A stretch of 64,000 nt of DNA, from IMG/VR virus record IMGVR_UViG_3300029267_004162, positions 62,001-126,000 of that record; one strand, written 5' to 3'. Positions 1-48,976 of the stretch are shown one piece after another (position 1 is the first letter of the stretch; each line of letters begins with the position of its first letter). The notes under the pieces are model-generated. The model saw only the letters and a program-made list of their open reading frames with translations. It was not told the origin of the DNA and did not search any database. Made by a program: the position numbers and the translations under genes.

Positions 1-570
1 GCTAGCAGCTTTTTCACTAGGTGATCCGCTGTTGTTAACTTCCATATACAACTTACTGGCCACACTATCGTACCAGGTAACAACGAAGTACCAAGTCGTA
101 GCATCTATCAATCCCCCAACATTGAGGTCACAACGAAGGGTACCGCCGCCATTCATCAGATACATACGGAGGGCGGCTTCACTGGGACCTTCCCCAATAG
201 CCCAGAAAAATTCATTATCTTTGAAGGCGAAAATTTGCCAATCTGTACTGGTGCCGCTAGTATGAAGAACATCAGCGTATATCCAGCAAGCCATGGTGAA
301 GCTGTCGCCACCACAGTGAATGTTATCAGCACTAGGGCAACTCAGATAAGATCCATCGCCCTCTGAGGTGTGAACGGCAAAATCTAGTTTACCGCTAGCT
401 CTAGTTGGGTTATTAGTAGGCGATAAATCGTTGCTACCATAACTGTCGGCTCTTGTACCGCTAGCTTCTTCGAACTTCCAATAGGAAGATAGACTATCAG
501 TGGGGAATAATGGGGGTGGGGTATCAACGAATAATTTGTTCAAATAGGGTGGTGGGTCTCCCCATGGCAT
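1..570 (-). CDS. LamG/concanavalin A-like domain virion protein (3' end runs off the window)
   Basis: Not in the ORF track; translated by hand from ATG at 570 with SD CAGGAG: MPWGDPPPY...SYWKFEEASGTRADSYGSNDL...SFTMACWIY...TWYFVVTWYD...KLYMEVN, a typical LamG-like jelly-roll pattern; open to position 1. Confidence 0.75.
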   Translation of the reverse strand, partial: MPWGDPPPYLNKLFVDTPPPLFPTDSLSSYWKFEEASGTRADSYGSNDLSPTNNPTRASGKLDFAVHTSEGDGSYLSCPSADNIHCGGDSFTMACWIYADVLHTSGTSTDWQIFAFKDNEFFWAIGEGPSEAALRMYLMNGGGTLRCDLNVGGLIDATTWYFVVTWYDSVASKLYMEVNNSGSPSEKAAS

Positions 571-584
571 ATCAAATCTCCTGT

Positions 585-759
585 CTAGTAGTCGAGGCCA
601 CTACCTTCGTTCCAAAGGGTAGTTCGTTCTGAAGTGGTAAGTGCTTTTTTTCCAAAAACTGAATCCGTCAACGAGACTTGTGTAATACTGATCAGTTCCT
701 GTCGCTGCTCCTATCAAGAAAGGACAAATTAGGCTTCCCCTGTCTTTATACGGCTGCAT
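585..759 (-). pseudogene. Frameshifted C-terminal fragment of a LamG-like domain
   Basis: Hand translation gives PFLIGAATGTDQYYTSLVDGFSFWKK, then a +1 shift at an A7 run (645-651) gives ALTTSERTTLWNEGSGLDY*, matching the usual LamG C-terminal motif. Confidence 0.6.
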
Positions 760-761
760 GG

Positions 762-1085
762 TTAATAAAGGCCCCTTTGATGGGTATCAAATTTCAGACT
801 AGCAAAAGTGCTGCTGACACCAGAGTGGGTGGTTTTTTTGAGGGCACGAAATTGAGACAAGGAATCAGCTACTGCCGCACAAAAACGAATTCCTTTCTTC
901 TCCATGTGTGCCTCCACACCGATGCACACTCCAGGTTTAGAAGCGTAAACCCCCACTAGTAGACCAATTTCTGGGGGTTCGGTGGAAGGATGAAAATGAT
1001 GCACATGAAAACACCCGCTTGTGGGAAGTTGAGCTAAAAACCGTCTGGTTAAATCTCTCGATAATTCCAAGATGAGTTTGTTCAT
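762..1085 (-). CDS. Hypothetical protein
   Basis: ORF track; 5' end lies inside the 79-bp direct repeat. Confidence 0.55.
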   Translation of the reverse strand: MNKLILELSRDLTRRFLAQLPTSGCFHVHHFHPSTEPPEIGLLVGVYASKPGVCIGVEAHMEKKGIRFCAAVADSLSQFRALKKTTHSGVSSTFASLKFDTHQRGLY

Positions 1086-1103
1086 AGCCTATTTCCATCC
1101 CGC
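1025..1103. repeat. 79-bp direct repeat, copy 1
   Basis: 77/79 identical to 2144-2222; both mismatches are synonymous in the MNKLILELSRDLTRRFLAQL frame. Confidence 0.95.
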
Positions 1104-1119
1104 GTTTTCATAGCCTCGT

Positions 1120-2121
1120 TTAGCCCCAGTACCAATCGACAAGTCCTTCAAAGGTCTTAGAGGCAGTTTTGATAGTCCCCCTCGACGGAAGATAGGGTTT
1201 TAAGGGTTTTACAGAGTTGTAAGTCCGTGCTGGGGTAGTACGAATGGTGACTCCACCTACTGCATCGATAGCAGAATCATGCAGCATTTTCTCTGCCTTC
1301 TTTTTGCTAATAGGACTCCGCGCTACCCTCTTTTTATACAAGGCCTCAATTTTCTTACCCTCAACCTTTATCTTGTTAGCTTCTTTTTTATCCCTAGCAA
1401 CGGCTACAAAAACAAGGCTGGTCCCTTTGGGCGTTCGCTTACGAATTTGCGGTCTTCCCGGACCACCCTGAGCATTACTCGTTTTTTTGCCGTCGAGCCT
1501 AACAAACCATTTAAGGGTCTTATTCAAAGCAGATATAAAAGGTCGGTCAAATTCATGAGGGTAACCACTCTGTATAAACATGGTAGTTACACTGGCCCCG
1601 GTAGATACAGAAAGGTCTTCCTCCACCCTCATCTTATTCACTATCGCCTTGGGTGCCCCTTTTCCTGGAGCCCAGTCTATATCTACACCTTCAACCAATG
1701 TCAGCAAAGTATCGAGAACATTATTGAAATTACCGGGACCCTTTGTTCCACTAAAGGTGTAAGTATCAAAATCTATTGATCCTACCTGGTCATCGGTAAC
1801 TGAATCATAGAAACCAGCAAAACGGCTTTTCATTGTTTTAACTTCAGTCTTCTTCTTACCACGAGCGAACAGAGGTAGAAGTTCCTTATAGGCCTCCTCC
1901 GTCAAACTAGCAGAGTGTTTAATTCTACCCTTTAGAATTAATATATATTCGCCAGAATAGGATATTGTACCACCGCTTTCATGCATCTCATCAACCGAGC
2001 TAGTCTCTGGAAAGACCTTTATTGTAAGTTCATCGGTAGATGCGGAACGGAGGGCTTCTGCCTTGCTAAATAAGTCAGCGGCCTTTTGTTCAAAAAAATC
2101 AGCTAAAAGTTCGATATTCAT
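1120..2121 (-). CDS. Hypothetical protein, candidate internal head protein, flanked by direct repeats
   Basis: 333-aa ORF with SD AGGAG; N-terminal LADFFEQKAADLFSKAEAL motif shared with two other ORFs; basic C-terminal half. Confidence 0.7.
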   Translation of the reverse strand: MNIELLADFFEQKAADLFSKAEALRSASTDELTIKVFPETSSVDEMHESGGTISYSGEYILILKGRIKHSASLTEEAYKELLPLFARGKKKTEVKTMKSRFAGFYDSVTDDQVGSIDFDTYTFSGTKGPGNFNNVLDTLLTLVEGVDIDWAPGKGAPKAIVNKMRVEEDLSVSTGASVTTMFIQSGYPHEFDRPFISALNKTLKWFVRLDGKKTSNAQGGPGRPQIRKRTPKGTSLVFVAVARDKKEANKIKVEGKKIEALYKKRVARSPISKKKAEKMLHDSAIDAVGGVTIRTTPARTYNSVKPLKPYLPSRGTIKTASKTFEGLVDWYWG

Positions 2122-2143
2122 GTTAACTCCTACTTTCTTTCAT

Positions 2144-2222
2144 GAAGTTGAGCTAAAAACCGTCTAGTTAAATCTCTTGATAATTCCAAGATGAGTTTGT
2201 TCATAGCCTATTTCCATCCCGC
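2144..2222. repeat. 79-bp direct repeat, copy 2
   Basis: 77/79 identical to 1025-1103; overlaps a 24-aa truncated ORF (2130-2204) whose TAG overlaps the SD of the 333-aa gene. Confidence 0.95.
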
Positions 2223-2459
2223 TTGTTGTAATGTTTGCATGGCCTTCTGCCGGGTCTTATTATTCTTCTGATGTTTGGGGTCGGTAAATTCGATATCAAC
2301 AACCCGTTTTCCTGGCTTGGAAAGCCCAGCACAGATCACGTCTTTCCCTCGGTATACTTTTACGTAGCCATCCTCTTCAACCACTTTCCAAATAGTAGAT
2401 TCGAGAGAATAGAGAAGTTCTGTCCAACTCTTCTTCATGGTAGCGAATCCTAACCCCAT
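2208..2459 (-). CDS. Hypothetical protein (start may be 2438)
   Basis: ORF track; packed in the minus-strand operon. Confidence 0.6.
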   Translation of the reverse strand: MGLGFATMKKSWTELLYSLESTIWKVVEEDGYVKVYRGKDVICAGLSKPGKRVVDIEFTDPKHQKNNKTRQKAMQTLQQAGWK

Positions 2460-3538
2460 CGAGGGATATGGGCCTTTCTGGTTCTAACAGCTACTACCGC
2501 TTGAATTCCCGTGTCATATCGGTATTGTTTCTTGGCTGCTGGTAGGGTGCCGGCGGCTCCACCTCCCCCACCATCGGCTCCAATGTCCCTCTCTAATCGA
2601 CCAAGCTCTTCACTGAGAAAACTCAGGTGATCATATTCGAGGGTGATGGTCTGACCACCATACGAAAATTGCATGTCACCTTCGAGTAGATACTGCGTTC
2701 TGAGAGTCCACCACGCAGCGGCTTCCACGAGAAAATGCTCGAACCATTGCCAGGGGAAATTGCTGAAAGTCCAAGTGCTAAAGGGGTGTACGCGATTTAC
2801 ATAATTGAGAGCCTTTACATAATTGTTGCATAGCTCTCCATCGCTATACGCTTGGATAATCCCAGCCTGTTTTTGGATTTTGTCTACGTAAACTCGCAGT
2901 TGTTTGATCAGACTGAACATAACGTGAGGTGCTGACCAGACGATATCGACTACCCGTTCAAAAGGCTTTCCGGTGAGTGGACGGTACTTCCAATAGATGA
3001 GGTATTCACCTCGCGTCAAACCAGGCAGTGAAAGCGTATAGCGGTACTGATCGGGTTCCTGTACTTCAATAACCTTGTTGCTGATTGCGTAGGTACCGAT
3101 TGAAGTAGGTGTTGGGAACTTGATGCCTTCCAAACTGCCGATGTATTCCACTTGAACAGATAAATCCACCACTGGAAAATCAGAGAACATTTCCCAGACG
3201 TCGGATTCGTTTTCCATCACGAAACCAACTTGCTTGTACTCTTCTGTTATGGGGTGGGCTACTACCACGAAAAAGCGAGAGATGGTATCCGTGTGGTCCC
3301 CACCACCGTATGTATAGGTCCACTCTATTTGGTGAGCCCCGAAAGTGGGATAACTGGGAACAGTCCAATCAAAAGCATACGCCTGAGGACCGGCCAAAGT
3401 GGCGGGGCCTTGCGTCAGGGTAGTGGTATTGGGATCCCGAATTACTACCTGCACCGCCCCATCTGGTACATGGGGAAGCGTTTCCCGAAAAGTAGTCTCC
3501 TTTTCGGGGAGTAGATTAGGTATGATTTGGTGAGCCAC
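2450..3538 (-). CDS. Putative neck / head-tail adaptor protein
   Basis: 362 aa, GTG start with GGAG SD; beta-rich N-terminus and helical C-terminus (LRVYVDK...YSDGEL...ALNYVN...QFSYGGQTITLEYD) resembling large-phage neck proteins. Confidence 0.5.
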   Translation of the reverse strand: MAHQIIPNLLPEKETTFRETLPHVPDGAVQVVIRDPNTTTLTQGPATLAGPQAYAFDWTVPSYPTFGAHQIEWTYTYGGGDHTDTISRFFVVVAHPITEEYKQVGFVMENESDVWEMFSDFPVVDLSVQVEYIGSLEGIKFPTPTSIGTYAISNKVIEVQEPDQYRYTLSLPGLTRGEYLIYWKYRPLTGKPFERVVDIVWSAPHVMFSLIKQLRVYVDKIQKQAGIIQAYSDGELCNNYVKALNYVNRVHPFSTWTFSNFPWQWFEHFLVEAAAWWTLRTQYLLEGDMQFSYGGQTITLEYDHLSFLSEELGRLERDIGADGGGGGAAGTLPAAKKQYRYDTGIQAVVAVRTRKAHIPRWG

Positions 3539-3553
3539 CTAAATCTCCTTGGG

Positions 3554-3736
3554 TTAGCGATCAAGACCGCCCCGACGACGTTTTCGTTTATTCTGCTTAA
3601 TAAATTTCCTCACCAGAGGATCCTTACTAAGTTTGCGCATCCGCCGTTCGGCTTCCTCCAAGACTTCCTCGGTGATTTCCCCACCCAATCCCATAGATAC
3701 ACTAACTTCTTCAGCAAAGCGCTTGATAGCACTCAT
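3554..3736 (-). CDS. Small basic hypothetical protein
   Basis: 60 aa, SD GGAG, KRKRRR tail. Confidence 0.55.
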   Translation of the reverse strand: MSAIKRFAEEVSVSMGLGGEITEEVLEEAERRMRKLSKDPLVRKFIKQNKRKRRRGGLDR

Positions 3737-3755
3737 CTTTTCTTCTCCGGTTGTG

Positions 3756-4574
3756 TCAGTCGTTCATCGTATCAAAAACTTCTTTGACCATTAGGGAAGC
3801 CTCAACATCAGAGACTACTTTACCTGTCGGTTTAGTCATTTGATACGCCTTATGAATAGTCCATTGCTCCCCGGTTGCGTGGGGTACTAGGCAAACTCCC
3901 CTTTTCTTGGGGAAAACTACCAAGATTTTGTTGTGATCGGATTGAATTTGAACTGGGCCTCCAAAGCGCTTTGTGCGATGGCGGTTGTCCCAAATAGCCT
4001 GAGCAACGGCAGTATCTGCTAATTGAGGCTTTTTGTTCGGGGGATCATCACCCCCACAAGAGGCTTCCCCTGAATTATACAAAGGGCTAGGTGATTGAAA
4101 CCGGCTATCACGACCTGTGCCCTGTGGTTGGGGGTTGGTTTGCCAATGAGGGGGATTGCCCCGGCCAGGACCAAATGGTAGAGGACTACGCCACCGCCAA
4201 GGAGCGGTTTGAGTATCATTATCGACGCGTGGACGGCGATACCAAGGTTTAGTGAAGTGCCAAGGCATCGCACCAGATGGATCCAAAATAGATTTGGCCA
4301 AGAGAGCAGCTAGACGCGATCTACATCGTTGCTTTCGTTGTTCTTGACGACTTTCTAGTGAAGCAGCCAGTTGTTTTGCAGTTTTGATCCATCGTGGAGC
4401 ATGAAGATCATCCATGGCCTCTTTGATTACTTTACAAATTCGCAAAGCAGCCTTACGCTTGGATGGACTTGTTGAGGGATTTCTAGCGAGTTTGTACAAA
4501 CCCTGAGAGGTTTGATACAGGATGGTTTGCGCCTCGACTAGATCTTTGATAATATTACTCATCAGCATTCTCAT
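3756..4574 (-). CDS. Hypothetical protein
   Basis: 272-aa ORF, Pro/Arg-rich middle segment. Confidence 0.65.
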   Translation of the reverse strand: MRMLMSNIIKDLVEAQTILYQTSQGLYKLARNPSTSPSKRKAALRICKVIKEAMDDLHAPRWIKTAKQLAASLESRQEQRKQRCRSRLAALLAKSILDPSGAMPWHFTKPWYRRPRVDNDTQTAPWRWRSPLPFGPGRGNPPHWQTNPQPQGTGRDSRFQSPSPLYNSGEASCGGDDPPNKKPQLADTAVAQAIWDNRHRTKRFGGPVQIQSDHNKILVVFPKKRGVCLVPHATGEQWTIHKAYQMTKPTGKVVSDVEASLMVKEVFDTMND

Positions 4575-5664
4575 CCAATTCAGTAACTTCAGGGTCCGGT
4601 GACGCTGCCGCCCTTTGCTTTTTGGTATTGGAAATGGCTTTGACTAAGCAACCATTAGCTACTGTGAAGAAGGGGTCTTCAGCCAGGCGGACTACCTTGG
4701 CTTGGAAAGGCAGACTAAATTGAGACAGTACCTCACGGAAACGCTCAATGAAACCAGGTACACAAGCCGTTCCCCCGGCTACTACAATTTCAAGCGGGCT
4801 ATCTATCTGAGTTTCCAATTTGTTGAATTCATTGGAGAGCTGTTTCAAAACCCCCTGGATCATCTCGGTATACGCATGGGTCAAGGCTAGTTTCTTGAGG
4901 TCTGTTGGATTCTTCTCTCGAAGATCAAGTTCTTTTTCTTTGAATCGCTGTAAAACCGAGACTTCCATGTCCAGCATGTTGGCTGCTTGCTGATCAATCC
5001 AATCACCAGATTGAGCAATCGAGAACATAATCAATGGCAGTTTTTTCCATGCCATACATATATTAACCATCCCAGCTCCGCACGAGATAGAAATCCCGGA
5101 GAAGGGGTGTTCACCCTCTTCATCCTCAGCCACGGGGCACTCACTAAAGATGATAGCCAGTGCTTCCGGAATGCACTCAACCTGGTAACCCAGGCTCATA
5201 AAGAACCCAGTCATGATAGCCTGGTGAAAAGTGACCGTGATATTGGGGTTATCAATGGGTTGGGCGGGAGCGCAATACACCAAGTGTTGGTTCTTGCAGG
5301 GCTGACCGAGCAAATTGCGGAGAATTTGCTGGATAATGGCGATACTGAGTTTTTCTCCACCTGTGTTCAGGATTCCATGACGCATAGGACGGCGAAGAGC
5401 ACCTACTCGGGTAGCAACGATATCAGTAGCATCACCCCCCAGGGACAGAGTGTTTTTCAGGCGAATAGCGTCCTCCCCTACCACATAGTAGTCGCCATCT
5501 TGTTGAACAAAGGACCAGTCGTTTTCACGCAGAAACTCCTCCGTGTCAACGGTAGACGCTGCCTGTAAAAAACAGTTGCGTTCTTGGGTGAATTCTGTAT
5601 CCCCTTCGTCAGACAATTTGCTTTTGACTAAAAAGGCGGTACCTACATCTAATCCAATGGCCAT
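4555..5664 (-). CDS. Actin-like ATPase (MreB/MamK/ParM/FtsA superfamily)
   Basis: All five actin-fold motifs in order: IGLDVGT (phosphate 1), IPEALA (connect 1), ISCGAGMVN (phosphate 2), VVAGGTA (adenosine), PFFTVANG (connect 2). Confidence 0.85.
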   Translation of the reverse strand: MAIGLDVGTAFLVKSKLSDEGDTEFTQERNCFLQAASTVDTEEFLRENDWSFVQQDGDYYVVGEDAIRLKNTLSLGGDATDIVATRVGALRRPMRHGILNTGGEKLSIAIIQQILRNLLGQPCKNQHLVYCAPAQPIDNPNITVTFHQAIMTGFFMSLGYQVECIPEALAIIFSECPVAEDEEGEHPFSGISISCGAGMVNICMAWKKLPLIMFSIAQSGDWIDQQAANMLDMEVSVLQRFKEKELDLREKNPTDLKKLALTHAYTEMIQGVLKQLSNEFNKLETQIDSPLEIVVAGGTACVPGFIERFREVLSQFSLPFQAKVVRLAEDPFFTVANGCLVKAISNTKKQRAAASPDPEVTELDENADE

Positions 5665-5673
5665 CTTAGCTCC

Positions 5674-6225
5674 TTATAGTTCGTCAGCCAAATCCGCTGC
5701 CCGGCTTTTCTTCTTTGTTTTTTTCTTCTTCTTTTTACCCTGACCCTTGAGGCCCGATTGATCAATGGACTTCTGGGTAATTTCAGCTAACAGATGTGGG
5801 TCAACGGAAGTACCACTTTCCAGAGCACCTTCTACTGATCCACTTGTTACCGTTGTTGTAGATTGACCGATTTGGTTTTTGATACCCAGCAAGAGGTCTT
5901 TCAACTCAGCTACTTGGGCATTAGCTTTTTCTTCGGCTCTTTTGTCGATTATTGTTGCCAACTTATCCAAATCAATTTCGGCTGAATGGTTATGTTGATG
6001 GGTTACTTTTCTTCCAACGACGGTTTTTGGTTTTTGATCTACTACCAGACGAAGTTTTTTCTCTCGGATCAAACGACGAAGTGTTTCGCTCGCACGAAGC
6101 TTCTTCCGAGAGATAAACTCTTCCAGATCTACGGTACGATTTTGGCCGATCTCTACATTCAATTCGGGAATGAAGACCGGACCAGGATTGGGATTGAAAA
6201 TGGTGTACAAGCCACTCGTCCTCAT
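5674..6225 (-). CDS. Hypothetical protein, candidate actin adaptor
   Basis: 183 aa, 9 bp upstream of the actin gene; small N-terminal domain resembling ORF 11151-11408, a helical segment and a poly-Lys tail. Confidence 0.65.
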   Translation of the reverse strand: MRTSGLYTIFNPNPGPVFIPELNVEIGQNRTVDLEEFISRKKLRASETLRRLIREKKLRLVVDQKPKTVVGRKVTHQHNHSAEIDLDKLATIIDKRAEEKANAQVAELKDLLLGIKNQIGQSTTTVTSGSVEGALESGTSVDPHLLAEITQKSIDQSGLKGQGKKKKKKTKKKSRAADLADEL

Positions 6226-6548
6226 TAGTATTCTTCAGTAGCCAGGTTGGATCGAATTCTAGTGACCAATTCGCCAATTTCCCGCAAAACACATTCTAGT
6301 CGATGAAAGGAATCTGCGTAACCATGTTCTGCTTCATATTCAGCGGCTTTCCGGATGATTTTCTCAGATTCATCCAATATGGACTTGGAATCGCACAATA
6401 ATTGTCTTGCACGTAAAAGACCAGAACGAACTGCTCTTTCTCCCACTAGTGTTCGGTTTCCCAAAGAAACCGATTTGGCCCATACCCTCTTTGCCTTCTG
6501 TAAAAGCAATCCCGCAGCAGACAGCAGAGACATTTCCGCTGGAGTCAT
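6225..6548 (-). CDS. Hypothetical helical protein
   Basis: ORF track; TAATG coupling to the next gene. Confidence 0.6.
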   Translation of the reverse strand: MTPAEMSLLSAAGLLLQKAKRVWAKSVSLGNRTLVGERAVRSGLLRARQLLCDSKSILDESEKIIRKAAEYEAEHGYADSFHRLECVLREIGELVTRIRSNLATEEY

Positions 6549-6603
6549 GGGGACACCATTTTCACCCCGGAGCGATAACGCTGGCTAGGGTTCCACAATC
6601 CTC

Positions 6604-7056
6604 TTATGGTAGGGGCCAGACTACGGTCCCGTCAACTAATTTGACCTCGTCAGTGGTCTCCCAATTGACATTGAAAAACACCTTCACTGGGTCTCCACCA
6701 TCTTCAACAACGTCCATATTACAATCTATCTTGTCCTCACCGCTAGGTTTATCAAAGGTGAGAGTTATTTCTGAGGCGGTTACGTCAACCTGACAGTCGG
6801 TTGCTGATGACTTAGCAATGTTATCAGCGGTCAGATTGGTTCCTGTGATGGTGATTATCTGCTGAGTGGCTATCCCATAGAAAGGGTCATGTATTAGAAA
6901 ATCGTTTGGTGATTTTTCAAACAAGACACCACACTTATCAAAGAAATCAAAGGCTTCTGCGAGAACAAATTCCTCCTCATCACTTATTGCCGGTACGTTA
7001 GGGTATTGATCATTTGTCTGCCGCATACTCGAAGCGGTTAAAGATTGAATATTCAT
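6604..7056 (-). CDS. Hypothetical virion-associated protein
   Basis: 150 aa acidic, beta-rich; SD AGGAG; follows a fibre gene. Confidence 0.6.
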   Translation of the reverse strand: MNIQSLTASSMRQTNDQYPNVPAISDEEEFVLAEAFDFFDKCGVLFEKSPNDFLIHDPFYGIATQQIITITGTNLTADNIAKSSATDCQVDVTASEITLTFDKPSGEDKIDCNMDVVEDGGDPVKVFFNVNWETTDEVKLVDGTVVWPLP

Positions 7057-7064
7057 AATTGCTC

Positions 7065-8669
7065 CTATGTCGCAAAATTGCCATGTGATACATTACCAGG
7101 AAAAGTCCCATCCGCAGGGGAGAAGTTAAAACTAGAATATGCACTAACGGTACTGTTGGATATCGTGATAGTACAGTTGGAACCTGCCGGTCCTTGGTAC
7201 CCTGTTCCTCCGGTTAGATAGATACTAGTACCACCTCGGGAGTGTCCAAACAGCGGAAGACTAGATGTACCGGATCCATTTTGAATTACCTGTCCACCCC
7301 AGGTTAGGGTGGATTGTTGAGCAACATGGGCAAAGCCATCGTATTGGTTGACTCGGAGACTACTGAATGAACAACTAGCTCGGTTGATGATATACAAGAA
7401 TATAGACGATAGCGTCCCAGGACCTTGCACACGACCACTAAAGGTAAAATTGCCTTGGCTAGAATCAAGCTGAATGAAGTAGCCTGAACTAGAAAAGGGG
7501 ATTGTGGCGGTACTTGAAATACCAACTTCAATACAACTCGCTGAGTAACCATAGAACATCTTCATAGAACCGGGTGTGGTAACTGTTAAAGAACCTAGTC
7601 CAGCTCGGTAATAAGAACCCATGGATACTTTGACCCCATATGCACCAATCGAGGTTAGTGACAGGTCACCACTCTGTTCCAGATAGGATCCGTATTGAAC
7701 ATCCAACGCGTTTGTGACATCGCTAATAGTAATGTCACACAGGAGGAAAGCTCGCGAACGTTTCACCACGAAGCCCACAGTGTTAGCAACACCAGGCCCG
7801 GTGAAATTTAAATCCTGTTGGATATTAGCAGAGGAAAACTCATTTACCCAAAATCCTACCCACCCGGTGATACCACCATTATGAGTAATGGTGATGGTAG
7901 TTGAATCATCTTCACCATAAAAACAACTACCGTTGATTACCTGAATACCTGTTTTGTCTGTGGGTACCCGGACTTGAAGATTGTCCTGAATAGTGAAAAC
8001 GGAGTTTTTATCAACTTGGATACCAAAAGTAGGAGATGAAGTCTGTCCTACTCGAAGTTCAGTGAGGGCTGTGTATCGACTGTTTTCACATAGTATGCCC
8101 ACTGCTGAAGTGTCAACCTCTACGATTCCATCACTTTGTACTACCGCACCATGATTGAGGACAAAAGCGTTGGCAGCACCGGTATTGGCGTAAAGATCCT
8201 TCAAAATCACGTTACAGTTTGCGAAGGTCGATTGAGAATTGAGAACAGTGCCACTGCCTCCAAAACTGGTGTAGTTACCTTCGATTGTAAGAGAGCCATT
8301 TGGTCCTACTGGAATACCCTGAAGATCAAATCCCGCAAAGGAAGCAGTTTCTTTGATATCAATGAGCACAGCAGCATCTATGCATCTGCCTTGTAGGTCT
8401 TGGATCGCCCTGTTGATGGTAGCATAGGCGGTTCCAGAAGTAGAGCCATCACCAGTGGTATCATTACCAGCCGCTCGGACATAAATGGTGAGAGCGGTAC
8501 TAATCGCACCTTCATTGGCCCACACTGATCCATCGTAAACGCGAAGACCAGCTACATTCTGGTTGAAGTACACCCTTCCTGCGGTTCCAACTGGATCAAC
8601 CGCCAAATTTTCGAATCGGGGGTTTATTAGATAACCCCCAGCTAATTGAAGATCACCATTCAAAAGCAT
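7065..8669 (-). CDS. Tail fibre / tailspike with pectin-lyase-like beta-helix
   Basis: N-terminal GRVYFNQ...LRVYDGSVW anchor motif, IYVRAAGNDTTGDGS...YATINRAI beta-helix cap, then repetitive G/S/V/I-rich strands. Confidence 0.7.
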   Translation of the reverse strand: MLLNGDLQLAGGYLINPRFENLAVDPVGTAGRVYFNQNVAGLRVYDGSVWANEGAISTALTIYVRAAGNDTTGDGSTSGTAYATINRAIQDLQGRCIDAAVLIDIKETASFAGFDLQGIPVGPNGSLTIEGNYTSFGGSGTVLNSQSTFANCNVILKDLYANTGAANAFVLNHGAVVQSDGIVEVDTSAVGILCENSRYTALTELRVGQTSSPTFGIQVDKNSVFTIQDNLQVRVPTDKTGIQVINGSCFYGEDDSTTITITHNGGITGWVGFWVNEFSSANIQQDLNFTGPGVANTVGFVVKRSRAFLLCDITISDVTNALDVQYGSYLEQSGDLSLTSIGAYGVKVSMGSYYRAGLGSLTVTTPGSMKMFYGYSASCIEVGISSTATIPFSSSGYFIQLDSSQGNFTFSGRVQGPGTLSSIFLYIINRASCSFSSLRVNQYDGFAHVAQQSTLTWGGQVIQNGSGTSSLPLFGHSRGGTSIYLTGGTGYQGPAGSNCTITISNSTVSAYSSFNFSPADGTFPGNVSHGNFAT

Positions 8670-8684
8670 ATTTTTCTCCTGGGT

Positions 8685-9251
8685 TCAATGACCGGAATTT
8701 TCAAGTCCATGGAAGTTCCTCTCAGGATCGGATCCGACAGGAAACAAGAAACTCTCTTCATGAAGAGAGGGAGCAGCGGATAAACCTGATTCACCACATG
8801 CTGAATTCAAACCTCTTGAAACAGCCCGAGCAATGGCCAACACTGCACGAGCTTCATCCTTTTCTATCAATCCTGAGTAGAAAGTATTGAAATAACCCAC
8901 GGTACTGGTCATAACCCCATCTACAACCACCACAACGACGGGCTGAATATTGGGTGTAAGAGGGAGTTTATCCAAAGCTTCCAGAGTTAGCTGACGGAGT
9001 TGTTCAAACGTAGCATTGGGATCATCCCAGTCTTCCAACGCCTCCGCCACATAACTCACCCCCATACAAATTTCTGGCTTATGATTGGCCACTTCCGGGG
9101 AAGTAAAGGCTATGCGAGCACCAGTTGCACTGACGTGTTCAATGATGGGGCTAACTACGGTCCAATTGGTGGAAGCACAGCCACCACTTAGACTAATCAG
9201 TCCGAGCAATAGAGCAGTTACAATAGCATGAGATACAGTAGGTATTACCAC
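8685..9251 (-). CDS. Putative lipoprotein
   Basis: Hydrophobic N-terminus ending LSGGC (lipobox-like). Confidence 0.55.
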   Translation of the reverse strand: MVIPTVSHAIVTALLLGLISLSGGCASTNWTVVSPIIEHVSATGARIAFTSPEVANHKPEICMGVSYVAEALEDWDDPNATFEQLRQLTLEALDKLPLTPNIQPVVVVVVDGVMTSTVGYFNTFYSGLIEKDEARAVLAIARAVSRGLNSACGESGLSAAPSLHEESFLFPVGSDPERNFHGLENSGH

Positions 9252-9262
9252 GATAAACTCCT

Positions 9263-9742
9263 TTAGACAACCAGTCCGGCATGTTTTAGTATCTGAGAAT
9301 CCCGAAACGTCAAACCTGTTAATTCACCTAGTATCAATGCCCCCTCGGTAGCATCCATCTCTTCCGTGTATTCAAACCCAAGAAAATACTGGGGTGCGTC
9401 TGGATTAATATCCACTGATCCTGGAATCTGAATGGACAGCATTTGTCCAGCAACGACTGAGAAGCTCTTGACAGTGCATGATATCCCCTCATCAGGAGTT
9501 TGAGAAGCAGCCTTCTTTTCTTTGTAGTGCCACACTAGTTTTCCTGGTACGGTCCCATTGCCGCCGGCATGAATCAGATTCAATCTAGGCTGGTGAATTG
9601 AAGTCAGCTTTCGTAGGCTAAGAGAGTCGGACAACGGAGCCCACTGTTCATTACCTAAGTTAATGTCCTTGTTAACCGGGAGTTTCATAATGAGTGATAC
9701 TGGTAGTAACTGTAGATCTGACAAACCATTTCCTCCTACCAC
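9263..9742 (-). CDS. Hypothetical protein
   Basis: ORF track; operon packing. Confidence 0.6.
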   Translation of the reverse strand: MVGGNGLSDLQLLPVSLIMKLPVNKDINLGNEQWAPLSDSLSLRKLTSIHQPRLNLIHAGGNGTVPGKLVWHYKEKKAASQTPDEGISCTVKSFSVVAGQMLSIQIPGSVDINPDAPQYFLGFEYTEEMDATEGALILGELTGLTFRDSQILKHAGLVV

Positions 9743-9744
9743 CG

Positions 9745-10119
9745 TTAGTTATTAACGTCGGGTTCCTCTAACACGAGGGATGCTCTTCCATCATGGGTCG
9801 CATCCTTGTATAATTCCCTATCTAAGACTTCGGGCTGTATGATCCCCGAATACTGCCCCGAATTAACATCAACAAAAATAGAAATGTCATCAAAGTTTTC
9901 TACCTTAAGACGATGGAAGTAAATCCGGAATACGTTATCACTATTAACTTGTTGGGGATAGAAGTACATCTCTGCTATGGGTAATTGACCCCGCCGAACC
10001 TGAACTAAGCCCAAAGTAACTAGAGAGGAGACGAAAGCACCATCTTCCATCAGGTAGGTGTAAACCGCCACTTCCTTACTTTGAGGGTGGATTTCAGCAG
10101 TACCATGCAGAGTGGCCAT
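9745..10119 (-). CDS. Hypothetical protein
   Basis: ORF track; TAATG coupling. Confidence 0.65.
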   Translation of the reverse strand: MATLHGTAEIHPQSKEVAVYTYLMEDGAFVSSLVTLGLVQVRRGQLPIAEMYFYPQQVNSDNVFRIYFHRLKVENFDDISIFVDVNSGQYSGIIQPEVLDRELYKDATHDGRASLVLEEPDVNN

Positions 10120-10385
10120 TACAAAATACTTCCATCGGGATTAGCTCGGGTGTATTCTACCCTCAGTGGTTGTAGGCGTTGTTCTATGTCCATTTTTACC
10201 ACGGCGGGAATGATTCCCCCAGAATACCTGACTTCAACCACCCTAGATGATTGGCCATGTACGATAGCCAATATATGATGACGGCCCACATATTGCTGGG
10301 CCAATAACACTAGTATGGTGTCATCTTCAGGAAATTCTTGACGTAGAGCCACATCAACCTCGACTAAGCATACTGTTTGAACCAC
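10119..10385 (-). CDS. Hypothetical protein
   Basis: ORF track; operon packing. Confidence 0.55.
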   Translation of the reverse strand: MVQTVCLVEVDVALRQEFPEDDTILVLLAQQYVGRHHILAIVHGQSSRVVEVRYSGGIIPAVVKMDIEQRLQPLRVEYTRANPDGSIL

Positions 10386-10726
10386 GCTAGGGCTTCACGA
10401 CAGGCCTCATTATGATGTTTAATTTCAAAATCTTGAACCACCATATCTTGAGGTGGCTTAAATCTCCCGATGGTTTCAACACCATTATAGACCCCAAAGA
10501 TCATCGTGACTATTTCATTCGCAAATTCTGTAGCTGATCGAAGGCCTTCGCCATGGAAAACTTCCATGTAGAAAGTCTTATCAACACCATCATGTGTTTT
10601 GGAAGCGGTCACATTGATGAAGGAGGAATCCACTTCTCTTTGGAGCCTGTATCCCCGACTCTTAAGGAGTTGTGAAACATCCCTTAGGAAAGTCCCAGCA
10701 AACTGGGTAACGATTTGAAGACTCAT
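10364..10726 (-). CDS. Hypothetical protein
   Basis: ORF track; ATGA coupling to the HNH gene. Confidence 0.65.
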   Translation of the reverse strand: MSLQIVTQFAGTFLRDVSQLLKSRGYRLQREVDSSFINVTASKTHDGVDKTFYMEVFHGEGLRSATEFANEIVTMIFGVYNGVETIGRFKPPQDMVVQDFEIKHHNEACREALAWFKQYA

Positions 10727-11151
10727 AATTTTCTTCCAATTTGAAGGTTAGCCTGTCGATCTAGGATAGCCTGGATAAACCGAACATAGCTGGTTTCTCC
10801 AGCCGCCCTGGATTGTTCCTTCAACTTGAGGATTGTTCCAGGAGATAGGTTCAAACGAACTTGTTTCGTCTCGACCTCATCTGGTTCAATTATCTTATCA
10901 GCGATCGTCCGGGCCAAACTGAAACACAGTTGATATTTGGGTGATCCTGGCATCCATTTGGTACTGACCAGGGAAGAAGCGGCTCCAGAATTGCTGATCA
11001 ATTTTAAAGCCACGGCATGAATCAACCGATGACAATTGGGGCAAATATCGGTTAGATTGTGTTGCTCATCGGATCCCCCAAAAGCCTGGGGGATCTTGTG
11101 ATGTTCTTCACCAACCGGACAAAGTTCGGTACAGAGACCGCACCGAATCAT
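10723..11151 (-). CDS. HNH endonuclease with C-terminal ribbon-helix-helix-like segment
   Basis: CGLC...HHKIPQAFGGSDEQHNLTDICPNCHRLIH; start moved to the ATG at 11151 (TGATG overlap). Confidence 0.85.
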   Translation of the reverse strand: MIRCGLCTELCPVGEEHHKIPQAFGGSDEQHNLTDICPNCHRLIHAVALKLISNSGAASSLVSTKWMPGSPKYQLCFSLARTIADKIIEPDEVETKQVRLNLSPGTILKLKEQSRAAGETSYVRFIQAILDRQANLQIGRKL

Positions 11152-11408
11152 CAGACGATAACTAGTTGACGCGACAGGATGGCGTCTTTTAGTTTCTTGT
11201 TGCCTTTGAGGACACCGCCTGGGGCTTTCTTGCACAAATCTACAGATTGACCGGATTGAATTATGATCCGGGTCTTCTTAAATTCACCACCTTTTTTATG
11301 GTCAATGAACTCAACCGGGATAGAAATCTCACCAGCTACGGTACTACGAACGGTGCAAGCACCAGCGTTCAACTTCTCAACTAATTTGCCAAACATTGAA
11401 GTTGCCAA
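11151..11408 (-). CDS. Small hypothetical protein downstream of tape measure
   Basis: 85 aa, TTG start with AGGAG SD; IQSGQSVDL...LKDAILSRQLVIV resembles the N-terminus of ORF 5674-6225. Confidence 0.6.
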   Translation of the reverse strand: MATSMFGKLVEKLNAGACTVRSTVAGEISIPVEFIDHKKGGEFKKTRIIIQSGQSVDLCKKAPGGVLKGNKKLKDAILSRQLVIV

Positions 11409-11419
11409 GGTACATCTCC

Positions 11420-14400
11420 TTATATACGAGTCTTCTTGGAATTCTGCTGAATAAAGTCGTTAGTTTTACTTAGAGTGTGTGGGAAATTCTTGACCTTAAT
11501 GACCAATTTTCCGTTCTCAAACGTGGCTTCTCCATCCACACCTTCTCCTCCTCTTTGTACTGATCCAGCGGAGGTTTCTTTAGGAGGTATGTACATTGTT
11601 GGAGGTTGATTATACGTGGTGGCTTCTCCGAATGGCCTGTCAGGCTTAATACTCGGATTAGGTGCCAAGGGTGACCCCGACAATGCTCTAGCTCGTAATA
11701 GATAAGCCTGGCTTTCCTCTCTGGCTTTTTCCAGATTCTCCTTGACTTTGCGAACCCATTCACTGTCCTTATTTTCATCCCCTTCCAATTCACCGAGAAG
11801 CTTTCTTTTTCTCTCGGCTATGGCTTCACGTTCTTTGGCATTGAGAGTATTGACATTCTCATCGGCCTTCATGTAACGTTCTTCCGCAGTCTGGGATTTT
11901 TCGGCTTGTTCTTGTAAACCTTGCAATCGATCAAACTGCTCAGAACGGAATTGCTGCTCATTAGCTAACAGCGATTGAGCCTTGTCCTCGCCAAACACGG
12001 TAGCAAAATATTTCTTGACTATCTCCGGATCAGCCCCTTCAGCCAACATCCCTAGGGCTTCATCGGTCATCCTAACCAATTCCTGCTGTTGCTTGAGTTC
12101 CTTTTCGGCTATCGCTTTCTTTTCCTTAGACTCAGTTATGCGAGTTGTTAATTCCTTAGCAGTAGCCACCCCAGCGTTTTTGAGCAGTTCCAATCGCTTT
12201 CTTTCGAAATCTCTCCTGATTCCGAAAGTAGCCTCATAGATCAAACTCTCTTCGGCTTCACCCAAGGCACGTTCACGCGTATCCTCTATTCGACGCTGTT
12301 CTCTATCTGCCTTCTTTTGAACCCCGGCTGCTTGACGACGACCCATTATGAGTTTCTGACCTTTTTCATACGCGGCTTTACGACCTAGAAGAGCATGCAC
12401 CTCTCCGGTTTCAGCTATTAACAGGGAACCCTTGGAGGTATACTCATTGATAGTCTGAATGGATTGCAATTTTTTCTGAAGTTCTTCATCGGTCAGTTCG
12501 GCTTCTTTCTTTCCTTTCAACGCCCCCAGTGTTCGGAAAGCAGTTTGTAGCATCAGCATTTTGTCATCAAGTTCGGTTACTTCTCTAAGGCCTTCATCAG
12601 TCCTAACCGTTTTAGAAAGGCCCCTTTGTTGTAACAGAATTCCAAATTGATCGGCTGACATCCGAGCGGATTCCTGTACCAAATCTTGGATGTCTTGATT
12701 ATATTTTTCGATTTCTCGCTTGGCTGTAGTTTTTCTACTACCATACGAATCCCCCTGCCAATCCTCCATAGCCGATTTACCCAATCCTGTGATAGATCCC
12801 TTATCCAGATACAAGTGTTCAAATTGGGCGGCTAATTCCAAACGTCGAGCGGCTGCTAGGGTTTCCTCTGCCAAAGCTGAATTACCAGCTTCTGCGGCTG
12901 CACGAAGTGAAGTGGAAAGGTCCATCAATTTCTGCTGAGTAATGGTAGTCTGTTCATTGGTTGCTATTTGAGCGGTAATTTTCTTTTGCTCATTTTCCAG
13001 ATATTGACGAGTTAGATCGTCGTTGTACCCGGCCAAACGTTGAGATACTTCGGCTTCTCTTATACGAAGCCGGGCCAAATCACGTTGGGCTTTTTTGGAT
13101 TTCTCTACGGCTTTGAGTTCAATCAAATCCGCTTCGGTTCGCATATTTTCTAGTTTAGCAGCTCGTTTGGGATCAGCCATGACATCCATAAATGCATCAG
13201 CGGCTGAGCCTCCCATTTTATGCCCCAATGCACCCCCACCAAAACCACCGATAATTCCACCGACCACACCACCAATAGCTGTTCCAATGATGGGGACCAC
13301 CGATCCTACAGCAGCCCCGGCCATAGCTCCAGTAGCCATTCCACCCATTCCGCCAATAACCCCACCTGCTGCACCCCCTACACCACGAGCAGCTCCACCA
13401 TATTGAGCGGTTGCTAATTCGGTCAACCCTGCGGTAGCCTCTTTCTTCTGATCTTGTAGAGTTCGCAAGAGTGCCAGATTACCATCGGCCTTGGCTTGTT
13501 CGATATCCAGATTGAGTTGAGAAACTTCTCTCTGCTTGATGGTGATTTGTTCGGTATCACTCAAAGCATCGATCACACCTTTAGTGGCTACGCCCATTTC
13601 CACTAGTCCCAATGCAAGTCCAATTGGTCCTAGAGCTTTACCGGCCCCTTTCAAGCCCACGGCGGCTCCACCTTGTAGTGCTCCAGCACCAGCTTTAGTC
13701 GCTTGTAAAGCTTTACCAGGTATCTGACCAGCGCCACGAATACGCGAGCCCCAACGAGCAGCAAAACCACCAGTTTTTGTTGCGGCTCCTGTTGCAGCGG
13801 CTCCCCCACCTCGACCACCAAGTTTACCTGCTAGACCCGGTATCCCACCGGCTTTTTGCAACAAAGCAGTCCCGGCCACAGTGGCAATTAGAGCATACAG
13901 TATACCCGTATGGCTCTTTAGTTCCTCCCAAATGGATTCCAGGTACATACCTGGTTTGGCTCGTCGGAGAATATCCGCGACTTCCTCCATAGGCTCAATA
14001 ACTTCTTCACGAGCCTCATCTCCCAGCAAACCCATGTCCTTGATGTGTTTTGTGAAATCCTCCCGGCCGTACTCAGCTACTTTGGCCAGCTCTAAAGCGG
14101 TTTCTTCAGTACCACCAATCATGGCTTTGATAGCCCGGACATTACTTTGCTGGGCGAATCCAAAGATTTCATCCAGCCACGTTCTATTTTCACCCATCAA
14201 TTGTTGTTGGGTCTTTTGATTCTTGCGAACTAGATCAAAATTAGCCTGACTGATCGTGTACATGTCTGCACGACCTTCCTTCATCAGGCCAGTTTGCATA
14301 GCCAACTGTTTAGCGACTATCAATTGCTGATTATATTCTTCAGTACCAGCCTTTAACCCAGCGGTAAGTTTGGTAACCAACACAGATTCAATTTCTGTAC

Positions 14401-17374: not shown

Positions 17375-17392
17375 AACCTTACTCCTCTGTGT

Positions 17393-17968: not shown

Positions 17969-18040
17969 AGCAATCTCTATCAAACATGTTCTTCTAGTCA
18001 GCGATAAGACCACCTAGTTTACTCACGGTTTTCTCCAATT

Positions 18041-18523: not shown

Positions 18524-18532
18524 GTTGATCTC

Positions 18533-19228: not shown

Positions 19229-19239
19229 TGCGGATTCCT

Positions 19240-32315: not shown

Positions 32316-32398
32316 ATCCTCACAGTTGTTGGTTAATCGTTCACTAGGTACACGGGTGTGAATCAGTAACAACAGTGAAATTACAGCAGAGATAAATA

Positions 32399-48237: not shown

Positions 48238-48291
48238 TTTCTCTGCCTTACCTGTGTTGTTGTTTTTCTCTCTCTTTTAATAACGAAATTC

Positions 48292-48975: not shown

Positions 48976-48976
48976 G

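What the first reader, a model, noticed from the sequence alone, without database searches (positions are those of the whole stretch)
4555..6225. Phage-encoded actin homologue with an adjacent candidate adaptor inside the virion gene block
Seen: complete actin-fold motifs, with the phosphate-2 Asp replaced by Ser (ISCGAG), and an upstream 183-aa protein with helical segment and poly-Lys tail. Established: some jumbo phages use tubulin (PhuZ) for positioning, and actin/adaptor pairs (ParM/ParR, AlpC/AlpA) move DNA. Inference: an actin-based filament that positions phage DNA or traffics capsids.
Basis: partly seen in the sequence, partly recalled or inferred. Interest (0 to 1): 0.65.

Follow-up and report, generated by a model that had tools for sequence, protein, structure and literature searches.

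The report
Huge-phage actin with docking partner
A 262-kb bacteriophage from sediment and seawater carries a volactin-family actin gene and, just upstream, a small partner protein whose tail is predicted to dock into the actin; the pair recurs in many other huge phages, so it looks like an undescribed viral cytoskeleton module.

Summary
Window 4555-5664(-) encodes a 369-aa actin-fold protein. It matches Pfam Volactin over its full length (E 6e-60), and its model (pLDDT 94) is closest to MamK, BeeR, MreB and F-actin (Z 26-30). The phosphate-2 Ser is real, but it is a trait of the whole volactin family, not a defect in this copy.

The genome is a complete, circularly assembled 262,650-bp phage with bacterial-type genes and no tubulin.

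The upstream 183-aa gene (5674-6225) is the only other gene in window 1-20000 that is shared with the phage loci carrying related actins. Its family lies upstream of the actin in 11 of 11 such loci. Its invariant C-terminal helix is predicted to dock in the actin's IA/IIA cleft (ipSAE 0.75, best control 0.00; the mark was reached by 58 of 80 solved complexes and 2 of 110 mismatched pairs), as ParR docks on ParM.

Of the 14 metagenomic or uncultured contexts I checked across the family, 13 are phage. One of these is a 557-kb contig labelled Promethearchaeota.

Polymerisation, the cargo and the biological role are not shown. My best reading is a late-expressed filament-plus-adaptor system that positions a phage cargo. 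I found no centromere repeats and no DNA-binding domain, which argues against a ParMRC-type partition system. I found no paper describing this module.

The parts
4555..5664 (-). Volactin-family actin-like ATPase, 369 aa (P0001)
   Evidence: Pfam PF25216 E 6.1e-60, full length. AF2 model pLDDT 94.1, pTM 0.92. VIA Z 29.5 to the MamK filament, 27.9 BeeR, 26.9 Mbl, 26.5 F-actin, 26.3 crenactin. 270 relatives in the word search, the best 120 listed all carrying PF25216.
5062..5097 (-). Phosphate-2 motif GISISCGAGMVN (aa 190-201), with Ser194 where actin, MreB and ParM have Asp
   Evidence: Read from the sequence. S194, G196, G198 and N201 are invariant or nearly so across the family. In relatives an intein is inserted directly after this motif.
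5629..5655 (-). Phosphate-1 motif (aa 4-12, GLDVGTAFL)
   Evidence: D6, G8 and T9 are nearly invariant in A1 and A3.
4750..4788 (-). Adenosine-binding motif (aa 293-305, IVVAGGTACVPGF)
   Evidence: G297 is invariant family-wide; G298, G304 and F305 are nearly invariant.
5674..6225 (-). Candidate adaptor, 183 aa (P0002), founding a new family with no Pfam, PHROG or NCBIfam name
   Evidence: No significant named family. Besides the actin, it is the only ORF of window 1-20000 with homologues in the related phage loci. A family HMM finds a member upstream of the actin in 11 of 11 loci. Alignments A2 and A4.
5677..5727 (-). C-terminal docking segment of the adaptor (aa 167-183: end of the poly-Lys run plus the helix RAADLADEL)
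   Evidence: A180 is invariant, and the motif N-L-x-D-L-A-D-E-L sits at the extreme C-terminus in the family. It is predicted to contact actin residues 15-28, 173-176, 187-188 and 337-348, with ipSAE 0.75 against 0.00 in controls.
6040..6210 (-). N-terminal globular domain of the adaptor (aa 6-62), the presumed cargo-binding end
   Evidence: Model pLDDT about 90 over this part. Conserved motif in A4. A paralogous copy lies at the N-terminus of genome ORF 48140-49123 (E 2.7e-4). The only structural look-alikes are unnamed phage proteins.
5670..5675 (-). Shine-Dalgarno AAGGAG, overlapping the adaptor's stop codon, 5 nt before the actin ATG
   Evidence: Read from the sequence. The 9-nt gap indicates co-transcription and probably coupled translation.
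6225..6548 (-). 107-aa helical ORF whose stop overlaps the adaptor's start (TAATG). Operon neighbour, not shown to belong to the module.
   Evidence: No homologue in the related loci.
3756..4574 (-). 268-272-aa Pro/Arg/Trp-rich ORF overlapping the end of the actin gene. Operon neighbour, not shown to belong to the module.
   Evidence: No homologue in the related loci.

Best explanation
This is a two-gene cytoskeletal cassette of a jumbo bacteriophage. P0001 is a volactin-family actin-like ATPase that most likely polymerises into filaments when bound to nucleotide. P0002 is its adaptor. Its extreme C-terminal helix (RAADLADEL) inserts into the cleft between actin subdomains IA and IIA, formed by the hinge helix (aa 167-175) and the C-terminal helix (aa 334-354). 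This is the same site where ParR docks on ParM and where WH2-type proteins dock on actin. The long central helix of P0002 may oligomerise it, and its N-terminal domain binds a cargo. The cassette is co-transcribed with virion genes, so it acts late in infection. I think the most likely role is to position or move a phage-made cargo, with virion particles or capsids more likely than DNA, in the large cells or crowded cytoplasm that huge phages face. That would make it an actin-based counterpart of the tubulin PhuZ. Shown here: family membership, fold, conserved gene linkage, and a predicted interface that passed its controls. Inferred: polymerisation, ATPase activity, timing, cargo and purpose.
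For: Family and fold: Pfam Volactin E 6e-60. The confident model has only filament-forming actins among its top 50 neighbours in both Foldseek and VIA, with MamK filament at Z 29.5, rmsd 2.7, 294 aligned. The founding family member forms dynamic filaments in vivo (PMC10869688). Linkage: in a blastp comparison of all ORFs in window 1-20000 against 10 related loci, only the actin and P0002 have homologues. The P0002-family HMM hits an ORF upstream of the actin in 11 of 11 phage loci whose actins are 35-57% identical. Interface: ipSAE 0.75, best of 3 controls 0.00. The mark was reached by 58 of 80 solved complexes and 2 of 110 mismatched pairs. The runs agree in at least 76% of contacts, and partner pLDDT is 53. 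The contacting adaptor residues (A176, A177, L179, A180, L183) include the family's invariant A180. Operon: a 9-nt gap, an SD sequence, and overlapping neighbours. Setting: connector-like, tail and major-head genes lie on the same strand. Phage identity: circular 262,650-bp assembly recovered independently in several samples. Bacterial-type NAD ligase, GyrB, PolA and a sigma-70-type factor. No tubulin in the genome. Inteins split the gene at the phosphate-2 site in several relatives, which is typical of conserved, important genes.
Against: There is no experiment and no expression data: no RNA run holds the locus. The complex score used my own alignments, and it could partly reflect the model's memory of solved actin-peptide complexes. 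Partner pLDDT is only 53. The cargo is unknown: the N-domain matches only unnamed phage proteins. The P0002 family was not detected next to the more distant phage actins in L023, L024 and L034. The host is unknown.
Confidence: 0.5

Rival explanations
1. A ParMRC/AlpAC-type genome segregation system. The adaptor binds a centromere on the phage DNA, and the filament pushes replicated or plasmid-prophage genomes apart or to a replication site.
For: It is an actin plus a small adaptor whose C-terminal helix is predicted to use the ParR-type cleft. The genome assembles as a circle. Volactin's relative salactin aids DNA partitioning, and volactin dynamics resemble ParM (PMC10869688). There is a weak PHROG 'partition protein' hit at E 1e-4. 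AlpC/AlpA of prophage CGP3 is a precedent (PMC4446434).
Against: There are no iteron or centromere-like repeat arrays near the cassette or anywhere in the window. The intergenic gaps are 0-9 nt. The adaptor has no hit to any DNA-binding family, and its model shows no recognised RHH or HTH. The gene order is adaptor then actin, inside a late virion operon. In the main clade the pair sits between the prohead protease and head-tail adaptor genes. P0001 has no Pfam match to ParM/StbA at E up to 1.
Confidence: 0.15
2. A head-assembly factor. The actin-fold protein and its helical partner act as a chaperone or scaffold, or as an internal core of the very large capsid, rather than as a cytoplasmic track.
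For: In the main clade the pair occupies the slot between the prohead protease (phrog_20754, E 6e-69) and a head-tail adaptor-like gene, where scaffold and head genes usually lie. In L034 a ClpP-type protease and a coiled-coil ORF precede the actin. P0002 is scaffold-like in size and helicity.
Against: In this phage the major head protein lies 26 kb away, and the cassette sits next to connector and tail genes. The nearest structures are all filament formers, not Hsp70-type chaperones. No actin-fold capsid component is known (my own knowledge).
Confidence: 0.15
3. Host take-over. The viral actin interferes with or replaces the host's own actin-like cytoskeleton (MreB or FtsA) to change cell shape or block division during infection.
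For: Volactin itself is a cell-shape determinant (PMC10869688). MreB is among the nearest folds.
Against: Identity to MreB is only 14-17%, so copolymerisation is unlikely. A dedicated, co-inherited viral adaptor argues for a self-contained system. Late-operon placement fits poorly with early take-over.
Confidence: 0.08
4. A non-polymerising ASKHA-fold enzyme or ATPase that only resembles actin, with the neighbour unrelated in function.
For: The phosphate-2 Asp is Ser, and no polymerisation data exist for this protein.
Against: The Ser is shared with the wider volactin family, whose founding member polymerises in vivo. No kinase or Hsp70 appears among the top 50 structural matches. Linkage with P0002 holds in 11 of 11 loci, and the complex prediction passed its controls.
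Confidence: 0.05

Closest known systems
Volactin (VolA, HVO_2015) of Haloferax volcanii; Pfam PF25216
   Same: Same Pfam family over its full length (204 bits against a cut-off of 35). About 33% identity to haloarchaeal homologues. Same Ser-containing phosphate-2 motif, GISFGAGM-like. Volactin forms dynamic filaments anchored by their tips (PMC10869688).
   Different: It is encoded by a bacteriophage, not a haloarchaeon. It scores much lower on the family model than a Haloarcula copy does (204 against 447 bits). It lies in a separate, well-supported clade (SH-aLRT 99). It has its own upstream adaptor family, which is absent from the haloarchaeal loci. A role in cell shape is not expected.
ParM/ParR/parC plasmid partition (R1) and related Alp systems
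   Same: An actin-like ATPase plus a small adaptor. The adaptor's C-terminal helix is predicted to bind the cleft between subdomains IA and IIA. The ParR-ParM analogy is from my own knowledge of the published complex.
   Different: P0001 has no Pfam match to the ParM family. ParM ranks below MreB, MamK and actin structurally. There are no centromere repeats. The adaptor is upstream, not downstream, with no RHH domain detected, and the setting is a late virion operon.
AlpC/AlpA of Corynebacterium glutamicum prophage CGP3 (PMC4446434)
   Same: A phage-borne actin-like protein with an adaptor, used for viral purposes.
   Different: AlpC/AlpA serves viral DNA replication and positioning in a temperate prophage. 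The present pair is conserved in huge phages inside structural gene blocks.
PhuZ tubulin spindle of nucleus-forming jumbo phages (Chimalliviridae)
   Same: A jumbo-phage-encoded cytoskeletal polymer. PhuZ positions the phage nucleus and delivers capsids (PMC8314001, PMC9067925).
   Different: A different protein superfamily: no tubulin gene is present in this genome. No dedicated adaptor comparable to P0002 is part of the PhuZ system as far as I know. The resemblance is functional and hypothetical only.
MamK (magnetosome actin), the nearest solved structure
   Same: Best structural match: 5ljv filament form, Z 29.5, rmsd 2.7 A over 294 residues. MamK positions protein- or membrane-bounded particles along a filament.
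   Different: 18% identity. The NCBIfam MamK model gives 23.5 bits against a cut-off of 400, so P0001 is not a member.

Membership tests
Volactin family (Pfam PF25216) | Full-length match to the family HMM above the curated cut-off | tested here: met
   203.8 bits against 35, E 6.1e-60, model positions 1-321 of 321; confirmed on the genome.
Volactin family (Pfam PF25216) | Family-typical nucleotide-binding motifs, including the Ser-containing phosphate-2 motif (S-x-G-x-G-M-x-N) | tested here: met
   S194, G196, G198 and N201 are invariant or nearly invariant in 109 family members and present in Haloarcula.
Volactin family (Pfam PF25216) | Groups with the haloarchaeal volactins in a family tree (orthology with VolA) | tested here: not met
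   P0001 lies in a clade of 25 rows (SH-aLRT 99) in which all 9 context-checked members are phage. The three haloarchaeal sequences form their own clade elsewhere. It is therefore a family member but not a VolA orthologue.
Volactin family (Pfam PF25216) | Dynamic polymerisation in vivo | not testable with these tools
   Shown only for H. volcanii VolA (PMC10869688).
Filament-forming actin superfamily, as opposed to ASKHA kinases or Hsp70 | Four-subdomain actin fold whose nearest neighbours are polymerising actins | tested here: met
   The top 50 Foldseek and VIA matches are MreB, MamK, BeeR, actin, crenactin, FtsA and ParM.
ParMRC-type partition system | ParM/StbA-family ATPase | tested here: not met
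   No Pfam ParM/StbA hit at E up to 1. Only a weak PHROG 'partition protein' hit with no significant stretch.
ParMRC-type partition system | Centromere: an array of direct repeats next to the operon | tested here: not met
   Only chance-level two-copy repeats in 3000-9500. No tandem array near the cassette. Gene junctions leave no room for one.
ParMRC-type partition system | Adaptor with a DNA-binding (ribbon-helix-helix) N-terminus | tested here: inconclusive
   No family hit. The N-domain model (4 short strands plus 3 helices) has no PDB match. The domain could not be folded and searched on its own.
ParMRC-type partition system | The adaptor's C-terminal peptide binds the IA/IIA cleft of the actin | tested here: met
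   In silico only: ipSAE 0.75 against 0.00 in controls, with the interface at aa 173-176 and 337-348 of the actin and 167-183 of the adaptor.
MreB (PF06723) / MamK (NF040964) | Match above the family cut-off | tested here: not met
   No MreB_Mbl hit for P0001. MamK 23.5 bits against 400.
PhuZ-type phage spindle | Phage-encoded tubulin | tested here: not met
   No PF00091 match in the complete genome.

The most novel reading that the evidence does not exclude
The volactin family may be mainly a cytoskeleton of huge bacteriophages. Phage-context members lie on both sides of the small haloarchaeal clade in the tree. Each lineage pairs the actin with an upstream-encoded adaptor that ends in a docking helix: P0002 in this clade, a coiled-coil ORF in L034, and a membrane protein in haloarchaea. 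In phages the filament would carry or organise capsids or virions late in infection, or build an internal core for giant heads. That would be the first actin-based counterpart of the PhuZ spindle, and it would raise the possibility that haloarchaeal volactin was exchanged with viruses.
Probability: 0.2. Interest if true: 0.85.

Novelty: new variant of a known kind. Interest (0 to 1): 0.7.

Why it matters
Intracellular organisation by phages is so far known almost only from the tubulin PhuZ and the phage nucleus of one family. Here a different polymer family, with its own conserved adaptor, is spread over many uncultured huge phages on contigs of 170-580 kb. That suggests cytoskeleton-assisted infection is more general than thought. 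It also offers a compact pair (369 aa plus 183 aa) that can be tested directly in vitro. The finding changes how 'volactin' annotations in metagenome bins should be read, because at least one 'Promethearchaeota' volactin sits on what looks like a huge phage. It also gives the orphan volactin family its first candidate binding partner and binding site.

Tried and rejected
**DNA and protein look-ups**
- Megablast of the locus against GenBank phages found nothing.
- Single-protein pattern scans of viral and genome collections found nothing.
- The profile scan of 185,579 species genomes found nothing. That scan only reaches close relatives.
- The genome search cannot draw relatives for a virus record or from plasmid loci, so I could not survey the cellular spread of the family.
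- NCBIfam gave no volactin-model match, even for a Haloarcula copy.
- Names for 20 family representatives were almost all blank.

**The adaptor family**
- The word search for the P0002 family found only 5 members.
- Fold searches with the P0002 model matched only its long helix or unnamed phage proteins.
- The P0002 family was not detected next to the distant phage actins in L023, L024 and L034. There was only a weak hhalign hint in L024, E 0.058.
- The downstream ORF P0003 is not related to the approximately 245-aa ORF that follows the actin in the main clade.

**Checks that ruled things out**
- The centromere search was negative.
- Promoter and terminator scans were at chance level.
- I considered an archaeal (Asgard) virus because of the 'Promethearchaeota' label. 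I rejected it because of the sigma-70-type factor, NAD ligase, GyrB, PolA and a canonical SD sequence.
- I considered that the actin occupies the major-capsid slot. For this phage I rejected that, because the major head protein is at 31200-32372.

**Not done**
- No RNA run holds the locus, so I did not use read laying.
- I could not test homo-oligomer prediction of the actin, the complex with full-length P0002, or the complex with virion proteins, because only one complex job is allowed.
- I could not narrow the host phylum.
- I used the large representative search once, because placing the phage clade depended on knowing its more distant relatives.
Full report
**What is there**

One is a 369-aa protein at 4555-5664 (P0001); the other is a 183-aa protein at 5674-6225 (P0002).

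The genes are tightly packed:
- The stop codon of the preceding 107-aa ORF overlaps the P0002 start.
- P0002 ends 9 nt before the P0001 start.
- An AAGGAG Shine-Dalgarno sequence lies 5 nt before the P0001 ATG.
- The following 268-272-aa ORF overlaps the end of P0001.

All neighbouring genes are on the same strand. They include a head-tail connector-like gene (2450-3538), a 1455-aa tail lysin/tape-measure-like gene (11420-15787), and the major head protein at 31200-32372.

**The replicon**

The window is bases 62001-126000 of a 262,650-bp IMG/VR virus record that CheckV rates as complete.
- Its two ends repeat 144 bp, which is the signature of a circular assembly.
- The same genome, at 262.5-262.6 kb and with different start points, was recovered in several samples.
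- Runs that hold it are sediment and seawater metagenomes from three studies.
- It encodes an NAD-dependent ligase, GyrB, a family-A polymerase and ribonucleotide reductase, with a sigma-70-type factor just outside the window. Together with the SD sequence, this marks it as a bacteriophage, not an archaeal virus.
- It has no tubulin.

**The actin**

P0001 matches Pfam Volactin (PF25216) over the full model at E 6e-60. It has only marginal hits to Salactin and Actin, and none to MreB or ParM. No solved structure is detectable by sequence.

A model built on 109 family sequences is confident (pLDDT 94.1, pTM 0.92). Its structural neighbours are all polymerising actins:
- MamK filament: Z 29.5, rmsd 2.7, 294 residues aligned
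- BeeR: Z 27.9
- Mbl/MreB: about Z 26-27
- F-actin: Z 26.5
- crenactin: Z 26.3 (the Foldseek list adds FtsA and ParM)

The Ser in place of the phosphate-2 Asp is real, but it is nearly invariant across the family. It is also present in a Haloarcula volactin homologue. Volactin of Haloferax volcanii forms dynamic filaments in vivo (PMC10869688). The Ser is therefore a family trait that is compatible with polymerisation.

**Relatives are phage genes**
- The word search found 270 relatives. The best 120 are 50-57% identical and all carry PF25216, many on contigs of 170-580 kb.
- Every context I examined in this clade is phage-like and shares the same gene order: PhoH, a prohead-type protease (phrog_20754, E 6e-69), a 75-aa zinc-ribbon-like ORF, an approximately 190-aa ORF, the actin, a head-tail-adaptor-like ORF, and a Phage_tube_2 protein. 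In one locus a sigma-70 r4 protein and an RNA polymerase alpha-CTD protein lie nearby.
- This includes the NCBI contig of 557 kb labelled 'Promethearchaeota archaeon', whose protein is named volactin. I read that label as a binning error. This is an inference.
- The exhaustive search found 789 family clusters at 50% identity. Outside the close clade the best hit is only 40% identical.
- More distant members are again on phage contigs: L029, L030 and L034, and two uncultured huge phages of 485 and 595 kb in GenBank.
- Haloarchaeal megaplasmid copies are about 33% identical.
- In a maximum-likelihood tree, P0001 falls in a clade of 25 (SH-aLRT 99) with the phage sequences. The three haloarchaeal sequences form a small separate clade, and phage-context sequences lie on both sides of it. 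The tree is unrooted, and most of its rows have unknown context.
- Of the 14 metagenomic or uncultured contexts I checked, 13 are phage. The exception lies in a gas-vesicle gene cluster.

**The partner**

This is the main new evidence. I compared all ORFs of window 1-20000 with ten related loci by blastp. Only two had any homologue: the actin, and P0002 at 23-30% identity with E down to 3e-10.

An HMM of the P0002 family finds a member upstream of the actin in all 11 phage loci whose actins are at least 35% identical. In eight loci the member is directly adjacent. In three it is separated by one or two genes, and one of those intervening genes is a homing endonuclease. The pair has therefore stayed together while everything around it changed.

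The family has no Pfam, PHROG or NCBIfam name. Its parts are:
- a conserved N-terminal domain of about 57 residues (pLDDT about 90)
- a long helix (aa 86-123) and a second helix (aa 143-159)
- a basic stretch, which is poly-Lys in this phage
- an extreme C-terminal motif N-L-x-D-L-A-D-E-L, with A180 invariant

**Predicted complex**

I folded the last 54 residues of P0002 with P0001 residues 1-350.
- Score: ipSAE 0.75, best of three controls 0.00.
- The mark was reached by 58 of 80 solved complexes and by 2 of 110 mismatched pairs.
- The runs agree in at least 76% of contacts, and partner pLDDT is 53.
- The counts hold only roughly, because I used my own alignments.
- A pass may partly reflect the model's memory of known actin-peptide complexes.

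The contacts are adaptor residues 167-183 against actin residues 15-28, 173-176, 187-188 and 337-348. If E167 is aligned with actin Q137, residues 173-176 correspond to actin 143-146. The site is then the hinge helix plus the C-terminal helix, meaning the cleft between subdomains IA and IIA. This is the cleft used by ParR on ParM and by WH2-type proteins on actin. That comparison is from my own knowledge and is an inference.

**What the cargo might be**

This is unresolved.
- The N-domain has a paralogue at the N-terminus of another protein of this phage (genome 48146-48307, E 2.7e-4). There is also a weak trace in the neighbouring Laminin_G_3 protein.
- Its structural look-alikes are small unnamed phage proteins and the N-termini of larger phage proteins, including viral glycosyltransferases and proteins of jumbo phages.
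- This suggests a phage-specific docking domain rather than a DNA-binding one, but it is only a lead.
- There are no centromere-like repeats.

**Interpretation**

I commit to a late-expressed filament-plus-adaptor module that positions a phage cargo (confidence 0.5). I consider particles more likely than DNA as that cargo. The rivals, in order, are:
- a ParMRC-like genome segregation system (0.15)
- a head-assembly scaffold, chaperone or core (0.15), which is suggested by the protease-adjacent position in the main clade
- subversion of the host cytoskeleton (0.08)
- a non-polymerising ATPase (0.05)

**Novelty**

Actin-plus-adaptor systems and phage cytoskeletons are known kinds. What is new here is a volactin-family actin conserved across huge phages, with a new adaptor family and a predicted docking site. 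The full-text searches I ran found no paper describing it. That library lacks most subscription journals.

**Limits**
- There are no expression or biochemical data.
- The host phylum is unknown.
- Polymerisation was not modelled.
- I did not use read laying, because only DNA contigs hold the locus.

Noticed in passing
L008 (NCBI GCA_054390495.1, contig JBSWQT010000001.1, 557,248 bp): A contig labelled 'Promethearchaeota archaeon', whose protein NCBI names 'disk-shape morphogenesis protein volactin', has the same phage gene order (PhoH, adaptor, actin, Phage_tube_2) as the other huge-phage loci. It is probably a huge phage binned with an Asgard genome. Other NCBI or ENA contigs of 400-580 kb carry the same gene.
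   Followed up: partly
P0124, P0125, P0126, P0121, P0073; L010:10001-12220: Several phage copies of the actin are split by an intein. In P0124 it is inserted directly after the phosphate-2 motif (…GAGMxNI | C…). Pfam shows Intein_splicing and Hint-type domains.
   Followed up: partly
L035:4569-5669 (JGI 3300028028 contig, also an NCBI 'Patescibacteria group bacterium' MAG): A volactin-family gene sits inside a gas-vesicle gene cluster (GvpA, F/L, G, O and K, an AAA ATPase, a ParA/ArsA-like ATPase and a bactofilin). This is a possible cellular case of the same actin family serving a protein-shelled particle.
   Followed up: no
L025:4926-5834, L032:1800-2699, L033:1980-2903 (haloarchaeal megaplasmids): Haloarchaeal volactin genes are preceded by a conserved approximately 300-aa membrane protein. 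It ends in an acidic linker and a conserved amphipathic C-terminal helix (…GLL-x-R-x-RSL…). By analogy with P0002 it could be the unknown factor that anchors volactin filament tips to the membrane. The coiled-coil ORF before the actin in L034 ends similarly (…KLRNLLGDLKT).
   Followed up: no
G000 genome 48146-48307 (L037) and 46740-48110: The adaptor's N-terminal domain recurs at the N-terminus of a 327-aa protein, and weakly in the adjacent 456-aa Laminin_G_3 protein of the same phage. This hints at a shared docking module.
   Followed up: partly
L026:9131-9358, L027:9190-9417, L007:7191-7415, L005:6146-6373: The main phage clade has a conserved 75-aa ORF with two CxxC pairs (zinc-ribbon-like) between the protease and the adaptor. 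It is absent from this window, where a 107-aa helical ORF (6225-6548) takes that place.
   Followed up: no
window 18852-19025: An 18-nt unit is repeated 9.7 times (92% matches) inside ORF 18533-19228, so this protein has a 6-residue repeat.
   Followed up: no
G000 ends (genome 1-144 and 262507-262650): The record's ends repeat 144 bp, so the assembly is circular or permuted, although IMG/VR lists it as linear. Independent assemblies start at different points.
   Followed up: yes
G000 genome 20421-20513 and five other sites: ARAGORN finds six tRNA genes outside the window (Met, Leu, Asn, Lys, Gln). It also finds one 93-nt call with a four-base anticodon (cata), which may be an artefact or an intron-bearing or frameshift-suppressor-like tRNA.
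   Followed up: no
window 4555-4620 (P0001 C-terminus) and 5695-5740 (P0002 poly-Lys): This phage's actin ends in an acidic tail (net charge -4 over the last 22 residues). Many clade members instead end in a basic K-R-V-K-L-K-like tail. Conversely, its adaptor has an unusually long poly-Lys run. This may be a compensating charge swap between the partners.
   Followed up: no
window 3756-4574: The ORF after the actin is rich in Pro, Arg and Trp. It has no family match and no homologue in the related loci. It overlaps the actin stop, so it is probably co-translated.
   Followed up: partly
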